64,000 bases of DNA from Adineta vaga (Eukaryota > Animalia > Rotifera), in assembly GCA_021613535.1 (NCBI GenBank), contig CP075497.1, forward strand, positions 11,780,001-11,844,000. The letters run 5' to 3'. This document shows, piece after piece, positions 21,946 through 38,562 of this stretch. Every line of letters starts with the position of its first letter. Within the stretch, counting starts at the first letter, position 1. Both the position numbers and the translations under genes were made by a program. The notes under the pieces are model-generated. The model had not been told where the DNA came from and made no database searches. It saw only the letters and a list, made by a program, of their open reading frames with translations.

Positions 21946-23594
21946 AACACCTCGTTCTTTCTCTCTAATAAAATCCAATTGAACACGATTATCTGTCGGT
22001 TGAGCGAAACGAGAATTGTATTTGTGTATATATTTACTCTCCCATCATCGTTTATTAATTGACGGATATTAAAATATGTCAAACGCAAGCTGTCCACGAC
22101 TATGACTAACACGAACATGACAAATCATGATCAAAAGACAGAAAAAGAAAAAGAACTCTCTCAAGTTAGTGCTAAAGAACAATGCAGAATTAAGTTGAAG
22201 GACAAAAAAGTAAAGTTTTTCTTCTTCTTCTCCTTGTCATATGAATATTAACTTGTCGAAAGGTGATGGTTATACTTTTATTCAAGTGGATGTTTGCGTG
22301 TCGAAAGAAGAGAGTGTTAAATTCGACATGCCTGATAAATGTTTGATTCACATATAAAGTTATCAAGTGTTCATACATGACAAGTTGAGTCCTCTTCATT
22401 ATCTAAACTAATAAAAACAAGAAGATATTTTCAAATTTAATTCTTGATATTAGAAAAAATATTTATCATTTGAATGAATATTGGTTTTGTTATCTGAAAT
22501 GTCTTTTATCAGATAATTGATAGTGATGATTTTGATCATCGAATGTGTTAAAATTAGTCAAATTTTATGAGACTATTTTTTTAATATATGAAGAAAATAA
22601 TGATTAGATAGAATGCTTTTTTTTCCTGCTTCTATTTGACTTTCGTGATTATCATCGATAATCGTGTTAAAATTCTTAGAAAACGTTTTTATTTGAATCT
22701 CTCATGTCGAAACAGAACTTTCTCCCATATCTCAATTAATATTAGTAACACATTAGTTTTGAGGATAGAAGAGCAGTTTGCAATGTCAATCAAAAGTTTT
22801 TCGATCCAATCAGCGCGTGTTTCTCTATCATTGTCTTTTTGTCGATTGGTTAACGAGTTGATTATCTACAAATTCATTGATTTGGTGTAAATTAAAAATA
22901 ATATCTACCCAAGTGTTTATTTGATCGTTATATCGATATGTTTTTCTCTTATTTATAGTTTTTGTTATCCACCAGATCTTGAAGTGATTCATTTACATTG
23001 TAAACTCCAAGTGTATCTGATATTTTAGGGAATAAGCAGCTCATCCGTCGGTGTTTAGATTTACGATTAACTACTTTACTCGTATGGCTTGTTTTAATAT
23101 CATTGATACATTGGAGTATCTATTGAACTTTTAATGAGAGCAATAATGATTGTAGTATAGATTTGAATTCCCCGATAACATTTCTTTCAGAATCCACATC
23201 CGCTCTCTTTTTGTCAGATTTCTACTGTTATATTTTGAAAATGAACGTAGATTTGTGATGTCTTTCTTAAAATAAATATAAAATTCTGTTTTTTTTGTGT
23301 GTTTATGAGCAGAAAAATTGTTAACATTAGTTCTTGTTATATGAATGTTTCTTACGCTATTTATTCAGAAAATAATGTTTCTAAATATCTCTATATATTT
23401 TGTTAAAAATTATCTAGACAAGAAGGGAGTGCTCTTTTCTGAAGTATTAATGCTAGAATGATTCGATGTTTATCTTGTCAATCTTCTCTTCATATATACA
23501 TTTTTTTTCTTTTTTCACTTCCTCAATTTCATACAAAAAGTACTTTAATTGAAATATAGATTATATCTAATACGATATCAGTTCTTTTATTACT

Positions 23595-24663
23595 ATGTCC
23601 TCGATTTTAATACCTTCACTGTACAACACAGCAAGACAATATGAATATTACAGTACCGTTGTTGTTTTTGCTGTCGGAATATTTAGCGATCTTTCAAATA
23701 TAATCGTATTCTTGACATTGCGTTGCTTTCGAAGAAATCAATCTGCTTTCTACTTTACCACCGAAATGATCTCGAATATTGGATTGTTTCTTGCTATCTT
23801 TCCAGTATACTTTTATCGGACTACAACTGGTATTGATCTAGCTCGCAGTTCATTAATCTGGTGTAAAATAAAAGACGGACTATCAGGATCTTTTGGTCTT
23901 TGTTCACTTTATACAATTTGTTTTCAAACACTTGATCAATTCTTATCAACAAATCCTCGACCAAGTTATCGACAAATCAGTTCATTGAAATTAGCTCATC
24001 GATCTATCCTTTGTATTGTCTGTTTTGTTATTCTACATAGTGTTCCCTTTATGATTTTAACTGGAATTCAATCATCTGGTTCCTGTGATATATCTAGCGA
24101 TGCCGTTAATTCTTATAATACATATTTCTATTATCCAATTTTGAGCAGTGCTCTGCCGCTAGTCATCGCTGTTACCTTTAGCTCATTAGCCTATCGTAAT
24201 GTTCGTCGAATTGTGCGAAGACAAATTCCTGTTGTTCGTCGTCGATTGGATCGACAACTGACATTGATGGTATTAACACGTGTTGTGAGTCTTATTCTGC
24301 TCGGTTTACCCTACATTATCTATAGTATCTATCGATTAAAACTTCGTGCAACCGATGACAATCAATTGGAAATGGCTGTAGCTAGTTTAACAGGTGCTAT
24401 TGTATATTCGTTGTTATATTTGAATTTTGCAGTAAGATATAATTTTATTTGAAACTTATAACTGATTGTTGGTTGTTTAGACGAGCTTCTATCTGTTTCT
24501 GATTGTATCCAGTCGATTTCGTCGACAAGTGAAACAAGGAATAGTGAAGAAATGTTGGACATGGTTACTTAGTTTATGCCAGAGAGACAATATGGGAAGA
24601 AGTAGAAATCAAATTAATCCAGAGTTGGCTCATGGAACAGTATCAGATGTTGAATCTATTTAA
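23595..24663 (+). CDS. Rhodopsin-like GPCR (cluster copy 1), 2 exons
   Basis: 7TM; CFQTLDQFL; LAYRNVRRIVRRQ..RRRLDRQLT; intron ~24433-24480. Confidence 0.9.
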
Positions 24664-25453
24664 TAATATTTTTACATCATACAAGAGTTTCAACCATTTG
24701 ATAAAACCGTGAATTAATGTTTATGAACAATACTATGCGTTTACTGAATGTAAATAAACGAATTTGAGGGTGTGTTTGTGAAGATATCTATTTTTCTTGA
24801 TCTTCTCGTAACAAATGAATACGAATTAATATATATGGATACATAGTTTCAAATGATTTTTGTAAATAATTATTGAAATTATCGTATCAAATACTCAGAT
24901 TCATCTTCTAATTAAGATCATCAAAGGACAAGCACATGTTGTCTTCACTGTGTTGCATTCTATAGATGAAAGCAAAAAAACTGTCAAGACACTTTTAAAT
25001 CACATCAATGTCTATCTCTTCCATTTATTACAGTAGCCGAGCGGAAGTAATGAAGAAAAATATTTTCTATTTTCAATAATAACAATAGAATTTAGTTTGG
25101 CATACTTTCATCACTTTATCATAAAATTGAAGTTTTATTATTACATACACTTTAAGTTTGAATAATAGATTTCTACCATTTACCTTTTCGAACCAACAAG
25201 TTATTGATAAGCGATATTTCTCTTTTTCTTTTATGAGATGTTCAGGGGTGACTTATTTAAATATTTTAACTTCCTTTAACATATTCTTTTCTATGCTAGT
25301 TGCATTAAGATTTTATATTTTACTCTATGCTCGTATATTGTTTCTCAGATTGCTCCGAACTCTTCTTCATCATTTCATTTTTATATCATACTTTTTAAAA
25401 TATTATTCTATAACCAGGTTTTAGATTATTTCAATCATTCTATACATTAACAT

Positions 25454-26522
25454 ATGTCATCATCATTAATCTCCATACTTAATAATATAACACAACAATA
25501 TAGAGCTTATAGTAACATTCTCATTTTCATTATTGGAATGATTAGTCATTTCAGTAATATCATTGTATTTTTGACATTACATTGTTTTCGAAGAAATCAA
25601 TCAGCTTTCTATTTTATTGTTGAGTCAGTTTCGAATATTGGATTGTTTCTTATTATTTTCCCAGGAGTGCATTATTATGATTTTACTGGCATCAGTATAA
25701 CCTCTATCTCACTCTTCTGGTGTAAATTTTTGGCTTCTGTTTCTGAAATATTTGGCTTTATTTCATTATTTACCATTTGTTTTCAAACATTTGATCAATT
25801 CTTATCAACAAATCCTCGACCAAGTTATCGACAAATCAGTTCATTGAAATTAGCTCATCGATCTATCCTTTGTATTGTCTGTTTTGTTATTCTACACAGC
25901 ATCGCTTCTTTTGTTCTAATGGATATTCAATCTTCTGCTGGATGTGGAGTATATAATGCAGCAGCGATTATTTACTATTCCCATTTCTATTATCCAATTT
26001 TGAGCAGTGCTCTACCATTAGTCATCGCTGTTACCTTTAGCTCATTAGCCTATCGTAATGTTCGTCGAATTGTGCGAAGACAAATTCCTGTTGTTCGTCG
26101 TCGATTAGATCGACAACTGACATTGATGGTATTAACACGTGTTGTGAGTCTTATTCTGCTTGGTTTACCCTACATTATCTATAGTATCTATCGATTAAAA
26201 CTTCAAGCGACCGATGACAATCAATTGGAAATGGCTGTAGCTAGTTTAGTAGGTGCTATTGTATATTCATTGTTATATTTGAATTTTGCAGTAAGATATA
26301 ATTTTATTTGAACCTTATAACTGATCATTGGTCGTTTAGATGAGCTTCTATCTGTTTCTGATTGTTTCCAGTCGATTTCGCCGACAAGTGAAACATGGAA
26401 TAGTGAAGAAATGTTGGACATGGCTGCTTAATTTATGTCAGAGAGACAATATGGGAAGAAGTAGAAATCAAATTAATCCAGAGACGGTTCATGAAACAGT
26501 ATCAGATGTTGAATCTATTTAA
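25454..26522 (+). CDS. Rhodopsin-like GPCR (cluster copy 2), 2 exons
   Basis: Paralogue of copy 1 with a near-identical 3' half. Confidence 0.9.
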
Positions 26523-27689
26523 TAATTTATATATAGAGATAACGGAGATATGATTATAGTCACGCTTACATTCTTGCTTTCTAGAATATTTTCATGTATT
26601 TTACTTGGGAGTTAGTTTTTTAGTTTATTAAAAAAATTACAAACATAATCCATTCTTCTTTTGAATCGATCATTGAGAAGCAAATGCATGGTCGAATAAC
26701 ATTTAACAAGAACGCGGAGAAGAAAACCCGTGAGAATTCTCACGTACTTGACTTCGTTGTTTGATTCATGTAGAAAAAAAGGGTATTCTGTGTATTTTTA
26801 ATCATAAATTGATTGAAGAAGAACCGGTTTATATGATATTTCAAAATATAATAGAAAAATTATCATTTTACGAGGTCATAAACAATAAAAGATGCATTAT
26901 TCTACTTTTCTCTCCATGATGATATGATTCATTAGTATTTAAATAACTGATTGCTTAAGACAATATATAGGAAAAGCATTATGAACACACAGTACATCCT
27001 TCTCGGTCATTGAAATTGAATGTCATATCAAACAACCTGTTATGTAAAATAATTTATATTGTTTTTCAAGGAACTATCAGAATTTTTACTATTATTTTGA
27101 CAGAATATATTTAAATTCATGTGAGTTTTAGAATTTATAGTAAAAGGAAGTACGTCAAAAATCTTAGACATCGTTCAAGAAGTTTACTATATTGAATTCT
27201 ATGGAAATAATGATAGAAAGTCAGATCACGCGTTATATCGTGGAAAATGTATTAAAATCCATGAATTAAGTTCTATTTTATCCCATCTTTGACTACATAA
27301 GGAGTATCTATTGAATTATACAATAATGGTTCATTCGATTGACTTTCCTAAATGATGATTACAAATAAATCAATTGATAGTTCATTCATTTCAACGATAA
27401 ATCGTTGTTTTTAAGTTCGAGAATCAGTCTTTTATGAAGTAAATCATCTCGGATAAACTGTTCTAGATTTTAATGCTAAATATGTATTGTTGTTTTTCAA
27501 TTAAGAAGATTTCTCTTCAATATTCAATATTTATTCTTGTTGAAAAAATTATTTTATTCCCTCAAGTTTGTCACTTTCTTGACAAAAGTGGGCGAACTGT
27601 CAAAATAAATTTCTTCCAAATTTCATTTCGATAGTTTGTGAAGACAATGACGAGAAATCTTATGAAATACTTATTTTCAAAGTGAGCTG

Positions 27690-28070
27690 TCATGTCATTA
27701 AATATCACCTTCTTTACTCTACGACCTACAACAATGATATTCATCTTTGGAATGATTGCAAATATTATTTTTTTCAACACATTTTCATCAATTTCTCACT
27801 GCTATTAATGACATGTATAGAAGAGCAAATTTTTAACGACACTCTTTTGATCTGTCTTCACTTTATACGATCTACTTCTTTATTTTGCATAATACATTCG
27901 TTTTTATCTTAACTGAATTTCGATCATCTATTAGATGTAAAATATTCAGTGTACTAATCAACTTCGCACGTATTGTGAGTTTTATTCTACTTGATTCATC
28001 GTATATTGTCTATCTATCAATGACAGACAATAATCAATTATGTTCAATCTGTATTATATGTATTTAATGT
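27690..28070 (+). pseudogene. Heavily deleted GPCR relic
   Basis: Fragments IFIFGMIANI, ILHNTFVFILTEFRSS..C.I, ARIVSFILL..YIVY and TDNNQL match the neighbouring GPCRs, but the ~1.07 kb gene is reduced to ~0.4 kb. Confidence 0.7.
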
Positions 28071-28555
28071 ACAAGTATAACTAATAATATTTCATATTCA
28101 TATCTGATAACGGAAGAAACTGAACATAAAAAGGAGACGTTACTTATGAAACATCAAGGATGACAAATAAATGTCATTCTAATCATCATTAACGGTCGAG
28201 TGATACTACTGAGAATGTTTCATCTTTTTCTTTCGTAGTCTTTAATATCATTAGGAAACATTTTAAAATGTTATTATATCAGATTCGTATTACCGTTGAC
28301 ATGGATAGAAAAGAAAATGCTTCTTTTTTTCTTTTAGATATTATTCTATGCAGAGCAAAAAACACGCTTCAATGTCTAAAATGATGTATGCAAATGAAAG
28401 ATCAAAGAATTCATCGCGATCCATTTACTTCAATTAATCTATTTAACAAAAATCATGAAGGTTTCAAAGAATTATTTAGCAAAACAGGGAAGTAAATGAT
28501 CATTTTGTTTTTTGGAAAAATAGAGATAAAATATAAAACAACAAGTGTTCAGAAG

Positions 28556-29622
28556 ATGTCAACATTTCAAATAGTACAACTCATTGACAATATAACCAAT
28601 TCCTATGAATTGTATTCGAGTAGCATTATTTTATTTGTTGGAACAATTAATAATGTTTTACTTTTCCTAATCTTTACTAAATTACGTATCTTTCGTGGTA
28701 ATCAATGTGCTTATTATTTAAAAATTGGATCCATTACTGATATGAGTGTTTTACTCGCTACTTTACCAACTAATGTCATCGGTCAGATATTACATGCGAA
28801 TTAACAGCACGGAGTATAGTGTGGTGTAAGCTTCAACTCATGTGGTCATATAGTTGTGGTTTTTATTCGCTTTATATAATATGTTTTCTTGCTTTTGATC
28901 AGTATTTATCAACAAATCATCGTCAAAGTTGGCGACAAAAAAGTACAATTAAATTAGCTCATTGTTTAATATTTCTAAATTTAACTTTTGCATTATTCCA
29001 TGGAACACTTTTTCTTATTTTTGGAGAAAATGGTATAGCAGGATGTACTATCTATAATAGTATAGCAAGCCGTTATTTTACATTCTTTTATTATCCAATA
29101 TTAAGCGGTATTCTTCCATTGATTATTAGTGGTGTGTTTAGTTTATTAGCTTATCGAAATGTTCGTCGAATTGTTCGAAGACAAGTACCAATTGTACGAC
29201 GTCGACTTGATCGTCAAATGACAGCAATGGCTTTGGCGAGAGTATTATGTATTATCATTTTAGGTGTACCATTTCTTTGTTACAGTCTCATTCAAGTGAA
29301 TACAATATATAGTATTCGAGATTCTGTGGGAAGATCTGTTCTCAAATTATCATCAGTTATTACATTTTCATTACTCTATGCAAATTATGCAGTAAGTTGT
29401 TTGTTTTGATCAGTTTGTAAAGAACTTTTGCTTCTATAGATTAGTTTCTATGTATTTTTATTCATTTCGCCAAGATATCGAAGTCAAGTGAAACATTTCT
29501 TGGTAAAGAAATGTTGGCGTCAATTAACACAATTATGTAGTGATAGATTAACCGTTCCAATGAATAATCGAATCGTACCAGATGTCGAACTGAACGATGC
29601 ATCTGTTGTCGAATCGATATAA
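28556..29622 (+). pseudogene. Rhodopsin-like GPCR with a single 1-nt frameshift at ~28801 (young pseudogene or sequencing error)
   Basis: GCGAATTAACAGCACGG: adding one T gives AAT TTA ACA GCA CGG AGT ATA GTG TGG TGT and joins the two ORFs. The rest of the gene and exon 2 are intact. Confidence 0.8.
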
Positions 29623-29861
29623 TTATTTACACATTGGATGAAAATCTGATTTTAAAGTTAGAAAAAGTATTTTCCTAATCTCTTTCTCGCTCATGTTGCG
29701 AGAAAGTTTAGATAAGGATAATATTAATTACGTAATTTCATCTCCGGAAACGTCTTGATAAAGTCACTTTTCCTATACTTATGTTAATGTAATAAATCTC
29801 TCTAACAAACGGTAAGATCATATTTCAAAAACATTTTTTTTTATTCAACAGCAAAGTCTAT

Positions 29862-30957
29862 ATGCATCACACGATAATGTCAATCGATCCTGCCATTTAT
29901 CGAATAGAAGACCTTACTAGAACGTATATATTCTACAGTAGTTTAATCAATTTAGTTATTGGCACTTTCAGTAATATTCTCGTTATGTTAGTTTTTCTAA
30001 CTGCTCGGATATTTCGAAGAAATCAATGTGTATTCTATTTAATCGTCGAATCTATAGCGAATATTGGTTTAATCTTCGCATATCTTCCATTTAATATTGC
30101 TGGTGAAATTATAGGACAAAGCCCTGCTCAACTTTCATTGATCTGGTGTAAGGTTCAATTAACAAGTTGTTACGTATTTGGTTTATGTTCACTTTTAACC
30201 ATATGTTTCCTTTCATTTGATCAGTATTTATCGACGAATTATCGACAACAATGGAGACAAATGAGTACCATTCAATTAGCACATCGTTTGACTTTCGGGA
30301 ATATTTGTTTTGCGATTTTACATAATATTCTTTTTCTTATATTTTCGGAAATTGGTAAATTAGGATGCGCGATTTATAATCCAATTGTAAAGATTTATTT
30401 CAAAGTTTTCTTTTATCCAGTCTTAAGCGGTTTTCTACCGGGGATCATCTTAATTATATTAAGTTTTCTGACTTATCGAAATGTTCAATGGTTTCGACGA
30501 AGACGATTAGTGATTATACGTCGCCGATTTCATCGTCAAATAACAGCAATAGCTCTTGCAAAAGTAATATGTACTATTATATTAGGTTTACCATTTCTTG
30601 GAACGGCTCTATATGAATTTAATTTGAATAATAATGAAGCAGATGAAAAGACATTAGCGATTTATAAATTATTATCAGCAGTAGCACATTCATTATTGTA
30701 TATCAATTATTCAGTAAGTACAATAAAAAGATTTGGAAACTGTGAAAAGAAATTTTAATTCGATTTTTTAGTGCAATTTTTATGTATTTTTGTTTATTTC
30801 ATCACGATTTCGTCATCAAGCGAAACAATTTTTTGTAAAGAAATGTTGGTATCATTTAACACGAATGCCAAGTTATCGATTAACATTGTCAAGAAGCAAT
30901 CGTATAGTACCGGAAACTAATCTGAGAATTGCAACTATCGTCGAATCAATATCATGA
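29862..30957 (+). CDS. Rhodopsin-like GPCR (last cluster copy), 2 exons
   Basis: 7TM; CFLSFDQYL; same TM7 intron; exon 2 CNFYVFLFISSRFRHQ. Confidence 0.9.
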
Positions 30958-31399
30958 AAATACAATGAACTAGTCGTTTGATTTTGTAATTAAATTTCAT
31001 TTAAAATAAAATAGATGATTGCAGAAATATCATAGTTTATATATGTTATTATTGCACAAAATCCCATTTCCTAACAGATGTTTCATGAATGTCAATTTAA
31101 ATATTTATTAGACACTTACTGACCTCTCTCATCTTTCTCATTGAATGGATATTATACTTTAACCATTTCTATTTAGTTGTACTTTGTGGGTATGAAGATC
31201 TTGAATAATCTATTCGCAATCCTATTGATATTTCCATGAAATTTCTTATAGATCAACATCGAATCTTTGTTCGACTTTCGTCCGAACGAATCATAAGACA
31301 ATCTTCACATACTTTGAATACCTTTTCTTTATTCGTCGTCTAGGGTTGAGATTGCTTCTTTTGTTTTCTAATTGATAACCTATCTCATCTCTTCTTTAG

Positions 31400-32713
31400 A
31401 TGTATTCTCTCGGTATTGATATTGGAACAACTTCTTGTAAATTATGTGTTGTTTCATCCAATGAACAAAATCGTACTATTTTCTCAGAACAACTGACTCA
31501 TCATGCTCATATTCTTCAAAACGAGTTTCCTTCATACGATGAACAATCTTCCATGAAAATTTTGGAAATTGTTCAGACTCTTTTAAAGAAATCAGGTAGT
31601 TTGAAAGATGATTCATCGATAAAATCAATTCAAATCTGTGGTCAAATGCATGGCTTCATTCTTTGGTCGTCGAAATCACCGCGAACGATTGTTTCTTCAC
31701 TTGTTACATGGCAAGATCAACGATGTTCAAATGAATTTCTTTCCTCACTTGGTTCATCATTAACACATCTACGAACAGGTTATGGTTTAGCAACTTTATT
31801 ATGGTTAATCGAACAACAAAAAGGCAAAGATGATGATTTATTGAAATATGATCGAGCAGGAACTATTGCTGATTATGTTGCCACGATTCTTTGCGATGAT
31901 GAAATAACAAATAAATCACAAATATCAACTCAAATGGCAACGAGTTGGGGTGCAGTTGATAATAAATGGCCTGTTGAACATCGTTTATTACCAGAAATTG
32001 TTGAACCTGGTACAACTATTGGTTATTATAAAAAGACAATTCCGATTTATGTTGCACTTGGTGATTTACAATGTTCAGTATTTAGTTGTCAACCAGCAAG
32101 AAACGAAGGAATTATTAATATTTCAACATCAGCACAATTAGCTTTAGTTATTGATAAACTATCTTCCAATTCTTCTCAAATTCAAGGTGATAATCTTTTA
32201 TCATCCATGCGTGTTCCTTATTTTCAATCGAAAGATTTATTAGTCGCTGCTTCACTCAATGGTGGAAATATTCTTTCTGCTTTTGTTCATCTAGTACATT
32301 CATGGACTTCATCATTAAATAATGATCAGTCCTTCGATATGCTTTGGTCCCGTTTAATTCAACTTGGTCTTCAATCAACAACAACAATAGATAATATATC
32401 TGCTGCTCTTTTTGGTGAACGACATGATCAATCGATGTCTGCTTCAATAACAAATATTCGTTCGATTCATATGTCTCAATTGAATGATATTGGTTGTGTA
32501 TTTCGTTCGATATGTCATTGGATTATAAAGAACTTGTTTGAAATGTTAGAAAAAGATTCTTCAACAATCAAAGGGATTATTGGAACGGGTAGTGCATTGA
32601 TGAGAAATGGTGTTTTACAACGAGAACTTCGAGAAAGAGTTCAGTGTGAAGTGAAATTTAATGAACATTCCGATGCGGCTTATGGTTCTGCTCTATTTGC
32701 TTTGATACAATAA
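31400..32713 (+). CDS. SHPK: Sedoheptulokinase (FGGY carbohydrate kinase family), intronless
   Basis: LGIDIGTTSCK, GQMHG, TWQDQRC, GYGLATL, ALGDLQCSV, NISTSAQL, AASLNGGN, GERH. Confidence 0.88.
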   Translation: MYSLGIDIGTTSCKLCVVSSNEQNRTIFSEQLTHHAHILQNEFPSYDEQSSMKILEIVQTLLKKSGSLKDDSSIKSIQICGQMHGFILWSSKSPRTIVSSLVTWQDQRCSNEFLSSLGSSLTHLRTGYGLATLLWLIEQQKGKDDDLLKYDRAGTIADYVATILCDDEITNKSQISTQMATSWGAVDNKWPVEHRLLPEIVEPGTTIGYYKKTIPIYVALGDLQCSVFSCQPARNEGIINISTSAQLALVIDKLSSNSSQIQGDNLLSSMRVPYFQSKDLLVAASLNGGNILSAFVHLVHSWTSSLNNDQSFDMLWSRLIQLGLQSTTTIDNISAALFGERHDQSMSASITNIRSIHMSQLNDIGCVFRSICHWIIKNLFEMLEKDSSTIKGIIGTGSALMRNGVLQRELRERVQCEVKFNEHSDAAYGSALFALIQ

Positions 32714-32773
32714 TCTTCGCTTTTGTTTCAAGTTAATTTTACTTTTAGATAGAAAAAAAAAGAAGTTTTTTTA

Positions 32774-34876
32774 ATGCCGGACGAAGAAGAAATGATTGAT
32801 GTGATTGTTGTTGGAGCAGGAATATCAGGTCTTTATGCTGCTTATCGAATAAAACAAAAAGCACCACATTTAACTGTACTTGTTCTCGAAGCGAAAGGTA
32901 AAATATAGAATAAGAATTCAATGATTTCATTTGAATTAAAGATCGAGTTGGTGGTCGAACATTAACGGTCGATTTAAAATCATCTCACGAAGAGAATATC
33001 ACAGATCGATTCGATTTAGGTGGTCAATGGGTTACCGAGTAAGATTATCATTCGTCAAAACAAACATTCCATTCGTATATTTTAGTACTCAAGTGAATAT
33101 AACTTCACTGCTTCAAGAATTACAATTGGAAACCTATGAACAATATCATACCGGTAAAAGTATTGCAGAATTACATCGTCGTATTCGACAATATTCCTTA
33201 TCCATGCCATTTGTTTCTTTACTTTCATTTCTTGAAAGTATTTACAATGTGTTTCGAGTAAAGAAAAAACGAGCGTCTTTCATTGTTTAAAAGAAAAGTA
33301 CTTTTATTGTAGCTTGAAAGTTTAGCAGCAAATGTTCAGAAATGGAATCCAATGAAGACAAGAAATGCTGATTATCTTGATCGACATACATTTGCACATT
33401 TAATGAGACCATGGATAAATAATAGTATGTATTTATATCATTGAGAATGTCTTTTACTTTAATGATTGAATAGGTATGAATCCATTGATGACTGCAGCGA
33501 TTCGAACTGTATTTGGTTGTGAACCAGAACAATTGAATGCTCTATTTGGATTAACTTATGCTCAAGCAGGTGGAGGATTTATGAGATTAACATTAAGTGA
33601 ACCTGGATGTGCACAGGAAAAGAAAATTAAAGTAAAAAACTTAAAATTGATCTCTTATGTAATGATTAGTTTCATGATGAATTCTAGGGTGGATCACAAC
33701 AAGTATCAGAATTACTTGTGGAAAAGATTGGAAGAGATAAAGTTCTCTTAGAAACACCTGTTCAAAAGATTGTACAGAATGAAGATGGTTCGTACGATTT
33801 GAATGCAATGAATATATATCACATGTACTGTTTTAGGTACTGTTGTCATTACTACAATTGGAAATCAAACTACATTTCAATGTCGTAAAGTTATTCTAGC
33901 CATTCCACCGTCACAAATCGGTGAGTTTGATTCGTGTAAGGTTTATGTATATTGAGTGTTTTGATTAGTTCCAATTCAATTCGAACCGATGTTACCTGGA
34001 TATAAACGGGAAATGTTGAAACATATGCCTATTGGTAGTTATTTGAAATTTATTTTTACTTTTGATAAGGTATGTTCATTATATCCTTCTAAATAATTTC
34101 AAGTTTAATTTGAAATTTATCTAGGCATTTTGGCGAGAAGATGGTCTCAGTGGTGAAGTTATTAGTGATGGAAGTTTTGCTCCACTTGGACTTTCGATTG
34201 GTCCAATGACATGTAAATAACTGTAAAACTAGTACAATACATTGAGATGATGTTTGTATATAGATCTTATTGATGGAACCACATCACATGGTACGCCCGC
34301 TCTATTAGGATTTATTGGTGGTCGATGTGCATCTGTATGGACAAGTGTAACACGTGAAGAACGACGTAAAGGTTTACTTGAATGTCTCTCGAGATATTTC
34401 GGTGGTCAGAAAATTACCGCACATTTAATTGAATATGCTGAAAAAGATTGGAATCTTGAACCGTATTCTGGTGGATGTCCTTGTCATAATGCGACTACTG
34501 GTTCAATGAAAGATTTTGTAGATGGTTTAAGAAAACCATATAAAAATCTTCATTTTGCTGCAACAGAAACAGCTACTCAATGGATGGGATATATGGATGG
34601 TGCAGTTGATGCAGGACGACGTACAGCATCAGAAGTTATAGTTGCACTTCGTCCAGAAGATCAACCTAAAGATGATGATATTGATGAGTATACATTTGAG
34701 AATCAAAGTAATGCATTTCTGTTTTTGTTAATTGAGACAACTTGATTTTTTTCTTATTAGATCGTAAATATCAACATTATCGTATTCCACGTTCACCATT
34801 TTATTATGCAATTCCAATTATAATCGTCTCTCTTGCTGCATTATCTAAAATTTTCTTTCCCAAAATTTTTTCGTGA
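32774..34876 (+). CDS. Flavin-containing amine oxidase (MAO-like), multi-exon, C-terminal TM anchor
   Basis: DVIVVGAGISGL..VLEAKDRVGGRT, DLGGQWV, SGGC, HFAATETATQWMGYMDGAV; hydrophobic tail. Confidence 0.9.
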
Positions 34877-34963
34877 TAGTGACTCTTTTTTTTAAATGTA
34901 TTTCAGTGTTTTGATTAGAAAAACGTCAATAAAAAAAAATACTTTTTTAGATTAATAAAAATA

Positions 34964-36369
34964 ATGACGGGTCTATTCGTACGACATTTATGGTCGGGTT
35001 TAACGTCTTCATCGTTTCTTCGTCCATCTATTCAGATTCAACCATCAATACGAACGAAAATGGTTCGACGAGTTAATCGACATCGAGTACCAACACATAC
35101 TAAGCCGAGTGATAGCTGGATACAAAAAAAAACAGTGTACGTATTGAATAAAATGACTTATTCGATGATATATTTGGTGAGTTTATATTTTAGAACACGG
35201 AATCTTGAAGCTGATGCGGTTTATGACGATGAATTTGCAAAGAGAAAACCAGTTGATAAAGTTTGGTTAGTTAAAGAATATCCAGTTCGACCATGGCCAT
35301 TGGGACAAGTTCTACAATGGCATCGAGAAATGGCACAACCGAAAATGCTCAATTCAATGGATTCATTTCTATGGGCACGATTAAAACTTGACATGACAAC
35401 TGCGAAAAAGACGAAATTTATTGAAAATGTCAAAGGTCTCGTTACATTTCCTCATTATTTCGAAGATCGACCACGTAAAAATGTTGTTCTCTTCTGTCGC
35501 GTAAGATTATCTACTTTCTATTCTTACATGTCTTCTAAAATAATATCCTTCTTCTCTAGCTTCCAGAACATATGAAAGCTGCTGGTAAGAATTTCTTTCA
35601 TTATTTCTACGAATAAAAATTCTCGACCGTTTTTAGAAAAATATGGTGCTTACATGTTCGGTTATACCGATGTTATCAAGCAGGTATAAATAAATGTCAA
35701 TCCATTATGTTCTGTTTTACGAATCATGTTTATTCTAGTTTGAACGTGGTGATGTCACTGATACAAATTATGAATATGTCTTGTGTGCACCTGATGTCTA
35801 TGCAGATATTTTACATTTGCGAAAAAAAATCTCAAAAGATAAATTTCCTAATCCTCAATACGGTTTGATATTCGCAAAGAAGACTGAATGATTAGAAAAA
35901 AAACTGAAACTTTTATTTTGTAGGTAGCCTTCATCCAAATGTTGATAAAATGTTAGAAAAATTTATCCGTGGAAAAGAGTATCAATCCGCTAAATATGAA
36001 GAAGCTCGTGGAATCGTTGAACTTCGATTTGGTATTGTAAGTTTTATTCATTTCATTGATTTAAATTTTGAATAAAAAACTCGATTTTAGATCAATATGT
36101 CTGATCAACAGTTAACTGAAAATTTTCAAGCTCTTGTTGAACAATTGACTACTCACTCTCAAACAAAAGCAGGTCCATTTGTTGTTGGATCTTCAGTATA
36201 TTGTCCGCCATCCACAGAAGAATTTCGAGTTGATGTGACACCATTCCTTCCTGATGAAGAAGATGTACTTGAAAAGAAAGAATCTGCTAAACAAGTTGTT
36301 GATGATTTAATTAAAAAGACGACACCAGATATTGGAGATGATTTACTTAAATCATCAGCAAAAAAATAA
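34964..36369 (+). CDS. MRPL1: Mitochondrial ribosomal protein L1, multi-exon
   Basis: Arg/Ser-rich presequence; LKLDMT..GLVTFPHYF..NVVLFC; FPNPQYGSL; NMSDQQLTENF, as in uL1m. Confidence 0.8.
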
Positions 36370-36526
36370 ATATTCTAGAAGAATTACAAAGATCTTGTTT
36401 GTGTTTGTTTTCTAGATATTAATCGAATAAAATATTCGTACTCGATAACCTTTCCATATTCGTCTTTTGTTTTTGTCCTTTCTCTTCGTCATATGAGACC
36501 ATCAAATAGTCGAATACATCGCTCGA

Positions 36527-37224
36527 ATGCATAAAGTCATTGCAGCTGCAATTGATTCAAATATTCTTTCCGCCTCGGAATCATTCATTGATCAATGTTG
36601 TACAAATAACGTTGAATATGCTCGAAATTATGACAAGAAAATTTATGATGTTAGAGCACCACCTTCGAAACATTTAGCTGTTGTATGTTGCATGGATGCA
36701 CGTTTAGATGTCTTTCGAATTCTTGGATTACAACCTGGTGAAGCACATATTATTCGAAATGGTAAATTCAATTCTTAAGATATTGATTTGCATTTAAAAT
36801 TTCTTTTAAGGTGGTGGTCGAATTCGTGATGCTGTTCGTTCACTTATTTGCAGTCAAACATTGCTACAAACAAAAGAAGTGATGATTATTCATCATACAG
36901 ATTGTGGTTTTACGTATTTTTCAGATAATGATCAAGTGATCACTGCACTTAAAGTAGATTTAAAATATTCATGTTTTCTTTATTCTCTGCATATGTATTT
37001 AGATACAACCTGGCACTAAAGTAGGTGTTCTACCTGTTTTTCAAACTATACCAAGTCAAGTATCAGCAACTGATCGACCAGATTTTATGCCAATTGCAGA
37101 TTTAGAACAATCAATTCGAGATGATATGGCTGAATATAAACAATATCCAATGCTTAATCAAAATGTGACTGTACGAGGATTTTTATATGATACAAAAACA
37201 GGTTCACTCAAAGAAATCAAATAG
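36527..37224 (+). CDS. Beta-class carbonic anhydrase (clade D / Rv1284-like), 3 exons
   Basis: [27 protein letters not shown]|[24 protein letters not shown] (CxDxR and HxxC zinc ligands); [16 protein letters not shown]. Confidence 0.9.
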
Positions 37225-38562
37225 AAATAAAAAAATCTCTTCTTATGTCAAGTGTAACCAAGCTAATCCAAATGTTCATTGTATCTCATATTTTTAATTC
37301 TCTTTGAAAAATAATGAACAGTAACATATTACAGAAAAATGTTCTTTCTAACAGTTGATATCATGAATAATAGGAAATATTTCCAGAATCCTATTTGATT
37401 GATAGTCGTCCATAAACAAATAATTTATTCAGAATTCAAAATACTTGTGTTATTTCTTTTTTTGTAAAAATTGATGACGATATGACTACGTCTTAGATCA
37501 CAATTAACATTACAACAATATACGATGTTAGAGCTCGTACAAATATTATTTTAAAAGTTAACAAAATTATCTCTTTTTATCAGTAAAACAGATGGACTTT
37601 TAATTGAGAAACTTTTGAAGAGCATTTGTAAGATACACTAAACAACGTTTTGCTTTTTATTATGATACAAATACATTTGTGTTTTTGGATCCTCGTACAA
37701 TCAAATTTTAAGTACAGATAAACAATTGTAGAAGATATTTTCGTGCAGTTGAACACATTTTTTGAATATTTTTTCCATTAATTCGATGTTTATCTTTCGT
37801 TGTTTTTTCATTAAAAAGACTTGCTAAGGAATAAAATTGTGAACATCGTTGTAATTCATTATTATGTCGTCTAGTAAACAACTTTGCATTGTCAATACCC
37901 AATAAATCTTCGTTAGATTGACTTAATTTTGCTGCCTTTTTATTCACTGGATTACCAATCGCAAACGCGATGATATCTGACTTGGTTTCCAGTGAATCTG
38001 ATGATCCAAATGATGATGATACACTCGGTATAAATACGAATTCTCGTTTCATTGATGAAACTGTTGTGCTCGTTGTTACGAATGAATATTTAGAAGTCTT
38101 GAAATGAATATATCATTGAATGACATCAATACAAAGATAAGAACGAAAAAGATAAGTTTTGTCCGTTATATAGATGAAAAAAAACATGTATTTGTAAAAT
38201 ATGCTATATACACATAGTTTCAGCAAAAAGAAAGAAAAATGCAGGCAGGAACATGATGTAAAAGGTGACACGAAAGTATTTCGTATAGAATAAACAAATT
38301 CTTTTTAATTCTCACAAGACATTTCTTCCATGACCTACTTTTTTAAGTTGATATGCAATTGAATTTCATCGAATATCTTCAAAAATGAACATAACAGAAG
38401 ACAAGAAAAAAAGGCGTCTAATGCTTATGTACTTTTCTATATCATTAGTGACATTTATCGGATAAAAAAGTACAATATTATGATACTTAAATCCGTTGTA
38501 AAAGGTCTTTTACTCATCGTTTTTCGTCGCCGTGAATTGTACGTCAAAAAACGACATACAAA

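What the first reader, a model, noticed from the sequence alone, without database searches (positions are those of the whole stretch)
31385..37224. Candidate trans-spliced operon: SHPK - MAO - MRPL1 - beta-CA
Seen: four co-oriented genes with stop-to-ATG gaps of 60, 87 and 157 nt. SHPK's ATG directly follows TCTTTAG. The SHPK-MAO gap holds a polypyrimidine tract and TTTTAG ~35 nt after the stop. In the MAO-MRPL1 gap, AATAAA sits ~17 nt before TTTTTAG, so the predicted poly(A) site and acceptor nearly coincide, as in nematode SL1-type operons. Known: spliced-leader trans-splicing occurs in bdelloid rotifers. Inference: a polycistronic unit, whose last member may be a gene of foreign origin.
Basis: partly seen in the sequence, partly recalled or inferred. 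Interest (0 to 1): 0.8.

Follow-up and report, generated by a model that had tools for sequence, protein, structure and literature searches.

The report
Spliced-leader operon candidate, Adineta vaga
Four unrelated genes of the rotifer Adineta vaga lie head to tail 60-157 bases apart, and RNA data show the rotifer spliced leader joined at the start of the third and fourth, so the run looks like a worm- or sea-squirt-style operon, a layout the papers I searched do not report for rotifers; co-transcription itself is not proven.

Summary
Four co-oriented genes lie at 31400-37224: sedoheptulokinase, an MAO-like amine oxidase, a mitochondrial-type ribosomal protein L1 and a beta-carbonic anhydrase.

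RNA contigs from four studies splice out all 18 introns. It is also joined at AG 36414/15, only 45 nt after the L1 stop, in one run. One contig runs unbroken from SHPK across gap 1 into spliced MAO. Two run from L1 across gap 3 into spliced beta-CA, one of them SL-headed. No contig bridges MAO to L1. The 5' ends of SHPK and MAO are unresolved.

Gene order and junction motifs are kept in A. steineri, Rotaria sordida and an unnamed bdelloid. A. ricciae has a 3-kb insertion exactly at the MAO-L1 junction.

Verdict: a good SL-operon candidate, possibly two bicistronic sub-units or a hybrid operon. Co-transcription is not proven, because contigs cannot show single molecules. The beta-CA is of a bacterial type, which supports an old foreign origin. 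The scan has already flagged many similar clusters elsewhere in this genome.

The parts
31393..31399 (+). Predicted SL acceptor (TCTTTAG) directly abutting the SHPK ATG
   Evidence: Read from the sequence. A pyrimidine tract plus AG 0-3 nt before the ATG is kept in A. ricciae, R. socialis, R. sordida, Didymodactylos and two unnamed bdelloids, but not in Brachionus. No RNA contig covers 31300-31457, so its use is untested.
31400..32713 (+). Sedoheptulokinase (SHPK), single exon, 437 aa
   Evidence: Pfam FGGY_N/C. Orthologues named sedoheptulokinase occur across animals; the A. ricciae one is 82% identical. Single copy in the genome.
32714..32773 (+). Gap 1 (60 nt): pyrimidine-rich stretch, predicted acceptor TTTTAG|ATAG (AG 32747-48); AATAAT at 32709-32714 covers the stop
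   Evidence: Motif positions. The YAG|ATA(G/A) acceptor is conserved in five bdelloid lineages. X2 contig 8 runs unbroken from 31458 to 32893 across the gap and on into spliced MAO. SL not seen here.
32774..34876 (+). MAO-like flavin amine oxidase, 11 exons, 531 aa, C-terminal hydrophobic tail
   Evidence: Splice joints. Frame check. Pfam Amino_oxidase. Best PDB matches are human MAO-A and MAO-B. Tail sequence.
34877..34963 (+). Gap 2 (87 nt): MAO 3' UTR, AATAAA 34928-33, SL acceptor AG 34949-50, 13-nt 5' UTR of L1
   Evidence: Loose end CTTACCAAG before 34949 in X2, X13 and X12. It equals the 3' part of the SL GGCTTATTACAACTTACCAAGAG (PMC3795323). AATAAA 12-16 nt before YAG|ATTA is kept in A. 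steineri and R. sordida. No contig bridges this gap.
34964..36369 (+). Mitochondrial-type ribosomal protein L1 (MRPL1-like), 7 exons, 355 aa
   Evidence: Splice joints. Orthologues of 355-356 aa carry PF00687. Basic N-terminal extension without acidic residues. Single copy.
36370..36526 (+). Gap 3 (157 nt): AATAAA 36365-70 overlaps the L1 stop, SL acceptor AG 36414-15, second AATAAA 36426-31, 111-nt 5' UTR of beta-CA
   Evidence: Loose end ACTTACCAAG before 36414 in X12. X13 contig 7 and X2 contig 10 run unbroken from 36091 to 36760. TTTCTAG|AT 45-88 nt after the L1 stop is kept in A. steineri and R. sordida, and mutated to TGG in A. ricciae.
36527..37224 (+). Beta-carbonic anhydrase of bacterial (Cab/Rv1284) type, 3 exons, 199 aa
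   Evidence: CMDAR and HTDC motifs. PDB relatives. The nearest relatives outside bdelloids are unnamed eukaryote-like contigs, then bacteria. A paralogue lies on chromosome contig 3 with the same intron positions.
37226..37231 (+). AATAAA just after the beta-CA stop; end of the cluster
   Evidence: Contigs end at 37228-37235. The next gene (37708-38052) is on the minus strand.

Best explanation
This is a spliced-leader-processed gene cluster of Adineta vaga that most likely works as an operon. RNA polymerase II starts upstream of SHPK and reads into the next gene. Each upstream message is cleaved and polyadenylated at a signal 16-45 nt before a 3' splice acceptor. The downstream message is capped by trans-splicing of the single 23-nt bdelloid SL at that acceptor.

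Shown: the gene models; SL addition at the L1 and beta-CA acceptors; RNA that is continuous across gaps 1 and 3; conservation of the junctions.

Inferred: that the continuous RNA is a polycistronic precursor; that SHPK and MAO are also SL-spliced; that all four genes share one promoter.

The data fit best with two tightly coupled pairs (SHPK-MAO and L1-betaCA). These may be joined in one unit or may have extra initiation ahead of L1. The confidence given is for at least one pair being co-transcribed; for all four sharing one promoter I put about 0.3.
For: - SL fragments of 9-10 loose letters, plus the shared AG, lie exactly at AG 34949/50 in three runs from three studies and at AG 36414/15 in one run. 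The SL sequence is from PMC3795323. The genome holds 42 SL RNA gene copies with a GT donor.
- Both confirmed acceptors lie at the upstream edge of their gaps, 72 and 45 nt after the upstream stop. Any outron must therefore start in the upstream gene's short 3' UTR or inside that gene.
- X13 contig 7 (1853 nt) is SL fragment + spliced L1 + the whole 157-nt gap + spliced beta-CA. X2 contig 10 also crosses gap 3. X2 contig 8 (2963 nt) is SHPK + gap 1 + spliced MAO. X12 holds the processed SL-betaCA form, so unprocessed and processed forms both exist.
- Order, orientation and short gaps are kept in A. steineri (47/104/304), an unnamed bdelloid (53/134/120) and R. sordida (41/134/493). R. socialis keeps the first three genes (190/121). 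SHPK-MAO gaps go down to 32 nt. The pair is also adjacent in Didymodactylos but not in Brachionus.
- The poly(A)-signal-plus-acceptor modules are conserved at sequence level.
- Other same-strand gaps nearby are larger: about 175-2000 nt in the GPCR array and 445 nt before SHPK.
Against: - All RNA evidence comes from assembled contigs. These can merge overlapping transcripts, and the tool itself warns that a contig across two genes shows no single transcript. A long L1 3' UTR ending at the second AATAAA (36426) would give a bridge, as would a beta-CA start site inside L1.
- No contig crosses gap 2 in any of four runs.
- In A. ricciae a 3-kb insertion carrying another gene sits exactly at gap 2, with the ~100-nt junction segment duplicated on both sides. 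L1 can therefore be separated from MAO.
- SL at SHPK and MAO was not seen.
- SL trans-splicing marks more than half of bdelloid mRNAs (PMC1925144). An acceptor alone therefore does not mark an operon; the unclustered beta-CA paralogue also has an AG 2 nt before its ATG.
- The flanks (GPCRs upstream, a minus-strand gene downstream) are also collinear between Adineta and Rotaria. Synteny is therefore not specific to the cluster.
Confidence: 0.6

Rival explanations
1. Tight packing without an operon. Each gene has its own promoter embedded in the 3' part of its upstream neighbour, and SL trans-splicing merely trims the resulting outrons. The bridging contigs would then be outrons or overlapping 3' and 5' UTRs merged by the assembler.
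For: - Contigs cannot show single molecules.
- A second AATAAA at 36426-31 would let an L1 3' UTR overlap the beta-CA 5' UTR.
- No bridge over gap 2.
- The A. ricciae insertion between MAO and L1 is tolerated.
- SL use is general in bdelloids.
- L1/beta-CA contigs have 1.3-2.6 times the depth of SHPK/MAO contigs. The tool warns that depth is a poor measure.
Against: - Gaps as short as 32-60 nt leave no room for a promoter. All promoters would have to lie inside coding exons of unrelated genes in every lineage.
- The poly(A)-signal-to-acceptor spacing is conserved.
- In Rotaria and A. steineri the gap-3 acceptor stays near the L1 stop while the distance to the beta-CA ATG grows to about 225 nt in A. 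steineri and about 395 nt in R. sordida. This ties the acceptor to upstream 3'-end formation.
Confidence: 0.33
2. Artefact. The continuity across the gaps comes from genomic DNA or unspliced RNA in the libraries, or from assembly chimeras, and the 'SL' ends are chance matches.
For: The run type is only guessed by the run finder. Contig ends are set by the assembly graph.
Against: - The bridging contigs have every intron removed, so they are not DNA.
- The same 9-10 loose letters match the published SL at the exact AG in three independent studies. The chance of a 9-letter match is about 4e-6 per site.
- SL genes are present in the genome.
Confidence: 0.03

Closest known systems
Tunicate operons (Ciona, Oikopleura) and the C. 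elegans 'SL1-type' operons
   Same: Co-oriented unrelated genes. Almost no intercistronic spacer. The poly(A) signal lies a few to a few tens of nt before the downstream trans-splice acceptor (16 nt at gap 2). A single SL serves operonic and non-operonic genes. These features of the known systems are from my own knowledge.
   Different: The phylum is Rotifera. The SL has a different sequence and ends in GAG. Polycistronic RNA is not yet shown here. Gap 3 keeps a 111-nt 5' UTR after the acceptor.
C. elegans SL2-type operons
   Same: Downstream genes receive a leader near the upstream gene's 3' end. The content is housekeeping and mitochondrial (MAO, MRPL1), as is typical of worm operons (own knowledge).
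   Different: No specialised second leader was seen; all loose ends match the one canonical SL. Spacing is 16-45 nt from signal to acceptor rather than about 100 nt with a U-rich element.
Chaetognath operons (Paraspadella gotoi, PMC12460157)
   Same: By that paper's working definition (genes less than 250 bp apart with at least one SL-bearing member) this cluster qualifies. That paper also found no operon-specific leader. Chaetognaths are gnathiferan relatives of rotifers.
   Different: Chaetognaths use several leaders, and the paper treats trans-splicing as independently evolved. Their operons were called genome-wide from RNA-seq and Iso-Seq data, which I did not have here.
Cab/Rv1284-type (prokaryotic) beta-carbonic anhydrases
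   Same: CxDxR and HxxC zinc motifs. The closest solved structures are of this type, up to E 1e-29. Identity is 44-48% over about 90% of the length to ~162-aa soil bacterial enzymes.
   Different: About 35 extra N-terminal residues and two spliceosomal introns. Present as two paralogue lines in all bdelloids examined, and SL-spliced.

Membership tests
SL-resolved metazoan operon | Two or more co-oriented genes with very short intercistronic distances | tested here: met
   Gaps are 60, 87 and 157 nt. Neighbouring same-strand gaps are about 175-2000 nt.
SL-resolved metazoan operon | Downstream genes receive the spliced leader at an acceptor in the intercistronic region | tested here: met
   L1 at AG 34949/50 in 3 runs from 3 studies, and beta-CA at AG 36414/15 in 1 run. 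MAO is untested: contigs start at 32756-32790 without a leader.
SL-resolved metazoan operon | A polycistronic precursor RNA spanning adjacent genes | tested here: inconclusive
   Spliced contigs cross gap 1 (X2) and gap 3 (X2, X13), and none crosses gap 2. Contigs cannot prove single molecules.
SL-resolved metazoan operon | One promoter upstream of the first gene and none for downstream genes | not testable with these tools
   No cap-selected or nascent-RNA data were available. The A. ricciae insertion at gap 2 hints that L1 can be expressed without MAO upstream.
SL-resolved metazoan operon | SL RNA genes with a splice donor in the same genome | tested here: met
   42 copies of GCTTATTACAACTTACCAAGAG|GT were found. 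One was read in context.
SL-resolved metazoan operon | Gene order conserved among relatives | tested here: met
   Conserved in A. steineri, an unnamed bdelloid and R. sordida, and in R. socialis for the first three genes. Only SHPK-MAO is adjacent in Didymodactylos. The order is broken at gap 2 in A. ricciae. Caveat: the flanks are collinear too.
C. elegans SL2-type operon | A specialised leader (SL2) on downstream genes | tested here: not met
   Loose ends at both downstream acceptors match the single canonical SL. All 42 SL genes found with the canonical leader as search pattern carry the same exon. This search could not have found a divergent second leader.
Tunicate / SL1-type operon | The poly(A) signal sits immediately upstream of the trans-splice acceptor, with no spacer | tested here: met
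   At gap 2 the signal ends 16 nt before the AG. At gap 3 the distance is 44 nt, and at gap 1 about 33 nt (AATAAT variant). The actual cleavage sites were not mapped.
Beta-carbonic anhydrase (PF00484) | CxDxR and HxxC zinc-binding motifs and family homology | tested here: met
   CMDAR and HTDC are present. Orthologues carry PF00484. PDB matches.
Horizontally acquired gene | Nearest relatives lie outside animals, and no orthologues occur in other animals | tested here: inconclusive
   In the best 120 of 7921 hits there is no animal other than bdelloids. The nearest named hits are bacteria plus one fungus. No tree including other animals' beta-CAs was built.

The most novel reading that the evidence does not exclude
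Bdelloid rotifers have true operons of the tunicate / SL1 type, and this four-gene run is one of them. It has absorbed a bacterial-type beta-carbonic anhydrase as its last cistron. If so, landing downstream of an expressed gene and acquiring an SL acceptor could be one route by which promoter-less foreign genes become expressed in bdelloids. That would link two hallmark oddities of the group: massive gene acquisition and SL trans-splicing.
Probability: 0.25. Interest if true: 0.8.

Novelty: new member of a known kind. Interest (0 to 1): 0.6.

Why it matters
Operons resolved by spliced-leader trans-splicing are documented in nematodes, tunicates, flatworms and chaetognaths. For rotifers, the papers I could search say they have not been reported (PMC7986045) or list them as not determined (PMC2481426).

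A documented bdelloid operon would add a phylum to this short list. It would also bear on whether trans-splicing and operons arise together, and on whether the gnathiferan cases (rotifers and chaetognaths) are independent.

This locus is a practical test case. Two acceptors already have RNA support, and both the unprocessed and the processed forms of one junction are seen. A. ricciae offers a natural experiment in which one junction has been split by an insertion.

The last cistron being a bacterial-type gene makes the locus useful for asking how foreign genes get expressed in bdelloids.

This is one of many such candidates the scan has found in this genome, so its value lies in being a well-characterised example rather than a unique object.

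Tried and rejected
- An exact look-up of the window's SHPK in public contigs found nothing, so I could not read A. vaga RNA contigs in full.
- Single-exon Pfam and PDB searches for the L1 gene gave nothing useful. Its identity rests on the annotated orthologues.
- The Logan contigs L026 and L027, which I had hoped were bicistronic RNA, still carry introns or long gaps, so they count only as genomic evidence.
- The P0127 group of 1302-nt contigs encodes a related beta-CA. The contigs are very AT-rich and carry no SL, so they are not bdelloid and are irrelevant to the operon question.
- I first took synteny as evidence of operon constraint. I downgraded it after finding that the flanking GPCR, EMP24, homeobox and downstream minus-strand genes are also collinear with Rotaria.
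- The genome-wide count of AATAAA-N5-30-TTTTAGAT-N0-30-ATG is only 1.7 times the reversed control (669 vs 394). This is weak support for a general architecture.
- Contig depths hint at two expression pairs, but the tool warns against ranking by depth, so I give them no weight.
- The bacterial promoter and terminator scan was not used because it does not apply to this organism.
- Spliced models were searched exon by exon, by reference; the joined-protein step was left out. In one search the exons were concatenated in memory only, to count in-frame stops.
Full report
**Organism and setting.** The window is contig 6, 11780001-11844000, of a 100.8-Mb genome in six contigs. A protein named Adineta vaga I4U23_012107 lies on a contig of 20,354,754 nt, which is the length of this genome's contig 3. 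The organism is therefore the bdelloid rotifer Adineta vaga. G+C is about 30% throughout.

**Observation check.**
- SHPK is one exon, 31400-32713. Its ATG directly follows TCTTTAG.
- The MAO-like gene has 11 exons (32774-34876), the L1 gene 7 (34964-36369) and the beta-CA gene 3 (36527-37224).
- Splice joints in RNA contigs from four runs of four studies list 15 of the 18 introns. Contig piece and loose-end positions fix the other three.
- All introns are 44-61 nt GT..AG. Exon lengths sum in frame and there are no internal stops. For that one check the exons were concatenated in memory only. All searches of spliced genes were done exon by exon, by reference, and the joined step was left out.
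- The gaps are 60, 87 and 157 nt.
- TTTTAG lies at 32743-48. AATAAA lies at 34928-33, 16 nt before the AG at 34949-50.

**Gene identities.**
- SHPK is a clear sedoheptulokinase with orthologues across animals.
- MAO exon 10 matches human MAO-A and MAO-B best, and the protein ends in a hydrophobic tail.
- The third gene's orthologues carry Ribosomal_L1 and are 355-356 aa long. Its N-terminal extension is basic and lacks acidic residues, which fits a mitochondrial L1.
- The fourth gene has the CMDAR and HTDC zinc motifs of beta-carbonic anhydrases.

**RNA evidence.** The bdelloid spliced leader is GGCTTATTACAACTTACCAAGAG (PMC3795323). The genome holds 42 copies of this exon followed by GT.
- In runs X2, X13 and X12, contigs that start at 34949 carry the extra letters CTTACCAAG. 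Together with the shared AG, these are the last 11 letters of the leader.
- In X12 a contig that starts at 36414 carries ACTTACCAAG.
The beta-CA message is trans-spliced at an AG only 45 nt after the L1 stop, leaving a 111-nt 5' UTR.
- X13 contig 7 (1853 nt) consists of the leader fragment, the fully spliced L1 gene, the complete 157-nt gap and the fully spliced beta-CA gene. X2 contig 10 also crosses this gap.
- X2 contig 8 (2963 nt) runs from SHPK codon 20 through gap 1 into fully spliced MAO.
- No contig crosses gap 2. No contig covers 31300-31457. MAO contigs in the other runs begin at 32756-32790 without a leader.
Fifty-eight further contig pieces were not displayed.

**What this does and does not show.**
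- SL use at two of the three downstream genes is direct evidence.
- Both confirmed acceptors lie at the upstream edge of their gaps. The RNA that donates the downstream exon must therefore begin in the upstream gene's short 3' UTR or inside that gene.
- RNA continuous across gaps 1 and 3 exists with all introns removed, so it is not DNA.
- Contigs are assembled from 31-letter words and can merge overlapping transcripts. An L1 message ending after the second AATAAA (36426-31) would produce the same bridge, as would a beta-CA start site inside L1.
- Co-transcription is therefore likely but not proven.

**Comparative evidence.**

| Lineage | Gap 1 | Gap 2 | Gap 3 |
|---|---|---|---|
| A. vaga (window) | 60 | 87 | 157 |
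| A. steineri | ~47 | ~104 | 304 |
| Unnamed bdelloid (1.5-Mb metagenome contig) | 53 | ~134 | ~120 |
| Rotaria sordida | 41 | 134 | 493 |
| R. socialis | 190 | 121 | beta-CA decayed to fragments |
| A. ricciae | 77 | ~3-kb insertion | 146 |
| Didymodactylos | 411 | L1 not adjacent | beta-CA on other contigs, no L1 within 1-1.5 kb upstream |
| Brachionus (monogonont) | SHPK has other neighbours | - | - |

- Two further unnamed bdelloid contigs have SHPK-MAO gaps of 32 and 435 nt.
- A. steineri and one R. socialis annotation even merge MAO and L1 into one protein.
- An EST study of another Brachionus species, B. plicatilis, found no SL.

The junction modules are conserved in sequence.
- Gap 1 has CAATAA over the stop, then a pyrimidine tract and YAG|ATA.
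- Gap 2 has AATAAA 12-16 nt before YAG|ATTA.
- Gap 3 has AATAAA over the L1 stop and TTTCTAG|AT 45-88 nt later. That acceptor stays close to the L1 stop even where the distance to the beta-CA ATG grows to about 225 nt in A. steineri and about 395 nt in R. sordida.
- SHPK itself has an AG 0-3 nt before its ATG in every bdelloid examined, but not in Brachionus.

Two cautions apply.
- The flanking genes (GPCR array, EMP24, homeobox, downstream minus-strand gene) are also collinear between Adineta and Rotaria. Conservation of order is therefore not special to the cluster.
- A. ricciae carries a ~3-kb insertion with another gene exactly at gap 2. About 100 nt of MAO 3' UTR, acceptor and L1 5' UTR are duplicated on both sides of it. 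In the L1-proximal copy the poly(A) signal has decayed and the acceptor is kept. L1 thus survives separation from MAO. This is the same junction that lacks a bridging contig in A. vaga.

**Mechanism proposed.** Transcription starts in the 445-nt space after the last GPCR gene and reads through. At each junction, cleavage and polyadenylation of the upstream message occur a few tens of nt or less before the acceptor, and SL trans-splicing caps the downstream message. This resembles tunicate operons and the C. elegans SL1-type operons rather than the SL2 type: only the single canonical leader was seen. The evidence is strongest for two pairs, SHPK-MAO and L1-betaCA. Whether MAO-L1 is also co-transcribed, or whether L1 has additional initiation, is open.

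**Confidence.**
- About 0.6 that at least one pair is co-transcribed.
- About 0.3 that all four share one promoter.
- About 0.33 for the rival of independent promoters embedded in upstream genes.
- About 0.03 for an artefact.

**Foreign origin of the last gene.** I used the 198-aa A. steineri orthologue as query; it is about 89% identical to the window's gene. After the bdelloid proteins, the best relatives are a few unnamed AT-rich eukaryote-like contigs at about 55% identity. Next come ~162-aa bacterial beta-CAs (Chloroflexota, Thermoleophilaceae, Gemmatimonadales, soil metagenomes) at 44-48% identity over about 90% of the length, and one fungus.
- No animal other than bdelloids appears in the best 120 of 7,921 hits.
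- The closest solved structures are Cab/Rv1284-type enzymes.
- The gene has two introns. A paralogue on contig 3 has the same intron positions and is not in a tight cluster. Orthologues exist in Rotaria and Didymodactylos.
I built no tree with other animals' beta-CAs.

**Literature and earlier notes.**
- Wenzel et al. [quoted passage not shown]
- Marletaz et al. 2008 list rotifer operons as not determined.
- Searches for Adineta with 'polycistronic' or 'operons' found no report.
- The original SL paper (Pouchkina-Stantcheva and Tunnacliffe 2005) is not held in the library. I could not check what it says about operons.
- The scan has already noted many similar clusters elsewhere in this genome, several with SL or poly(A) evidence at their junctions. 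I did not test those notes, and they are not independent support.

**Verdict.** The SL prediction at the L1 acceptor is confirmed, and a further SL acceptor was found in gap 3. The operon reading is the best explanation but remains unproven. It would be a new member, in a new phylum, of a known kind of system.

Noticed in passing
L020:13100-13330 and L020:16000-16200 (A. ricciae); same in L021: A ~3-kb insertion carrying another gene sits exactly between MAO and L1. The called gene is a Peptidase_C97 on the minus strand in one assembly and an Astacin on the plus strand in the other. About 100 nt of MAO 3' UTR, acceptor and L1 5' UTR are duplicated on both sides. In the L1-side copy the poly(A) signal has decayed and the acceptor is kept.
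   Followed up: partly
L029-L036 (Logan contigs of 1154-1302 nt): A 208-aa beta-CA about 55% identical to the bdelloid one lies on very AT-rich, intronless contigs. Six of them are exactly 1302 nt long, with the gene at different offsets, and in L029 the end repeats the start. This looks like a circular or tandem unit of about 1.27 kb from an unknown organism.
   Followed up: partly
window 23571-30954 (+): A tandem array of at least four rhodopsin-type GPCR genes (7tm_1) lies directly upstream of SHPK. One or more such GPCRs hold the same position in A. ricciae, A. steineri, Rotaria and an unnamed bdelloid. The A. ricciae annotation fuses the last GPCR with SHPK into a 714-aa protein.
   Followed up: partly
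L019:8086-8825 (G000 contig 3, about 4712086-4712825): A paralogue of the beta-CA (65% identical, same two intron positions) stands alone about 700 nt after a small zinc-finger-like gene. It has a pyrimidine tract and an AG 2 nt before its ATG. In R. sordida a second Pro_CA gene lies about 5.4 kb downstream of the clustered copy (L037:14151-15662).
   Followed up: partly
L042:15255-16367 (-): In the unnamed bdelloid metagenome contig the gene just after the cluster is an alanine racemase, a typically bacterial enzyme and so a possible further foreign gene.
   Followed up: no
G000 contigs 1, 2, 5, 6 (for example C1:2551158-2551338, C5:9884354-9925971): The 42 SL RNA gene copies mostly lie as divergent pairs about 130 nt apart (starts about 156 nt apart). 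They cluster in arrays, with the largest on contig 5 around 9.88-9.93 Mb and 10.91-10.93 Mb.
   Followed up: no
window 31360-31399 and the equivalent in L020: A block ahead of the SHPK acceptor (AATTGATAACCTATCT) is nearly identical between A. vaga and A. ricciae, and CTTATC-like motifs recur in other bdelloids. It could be a branch-point or promoter-proximal element.
   Followed up: no
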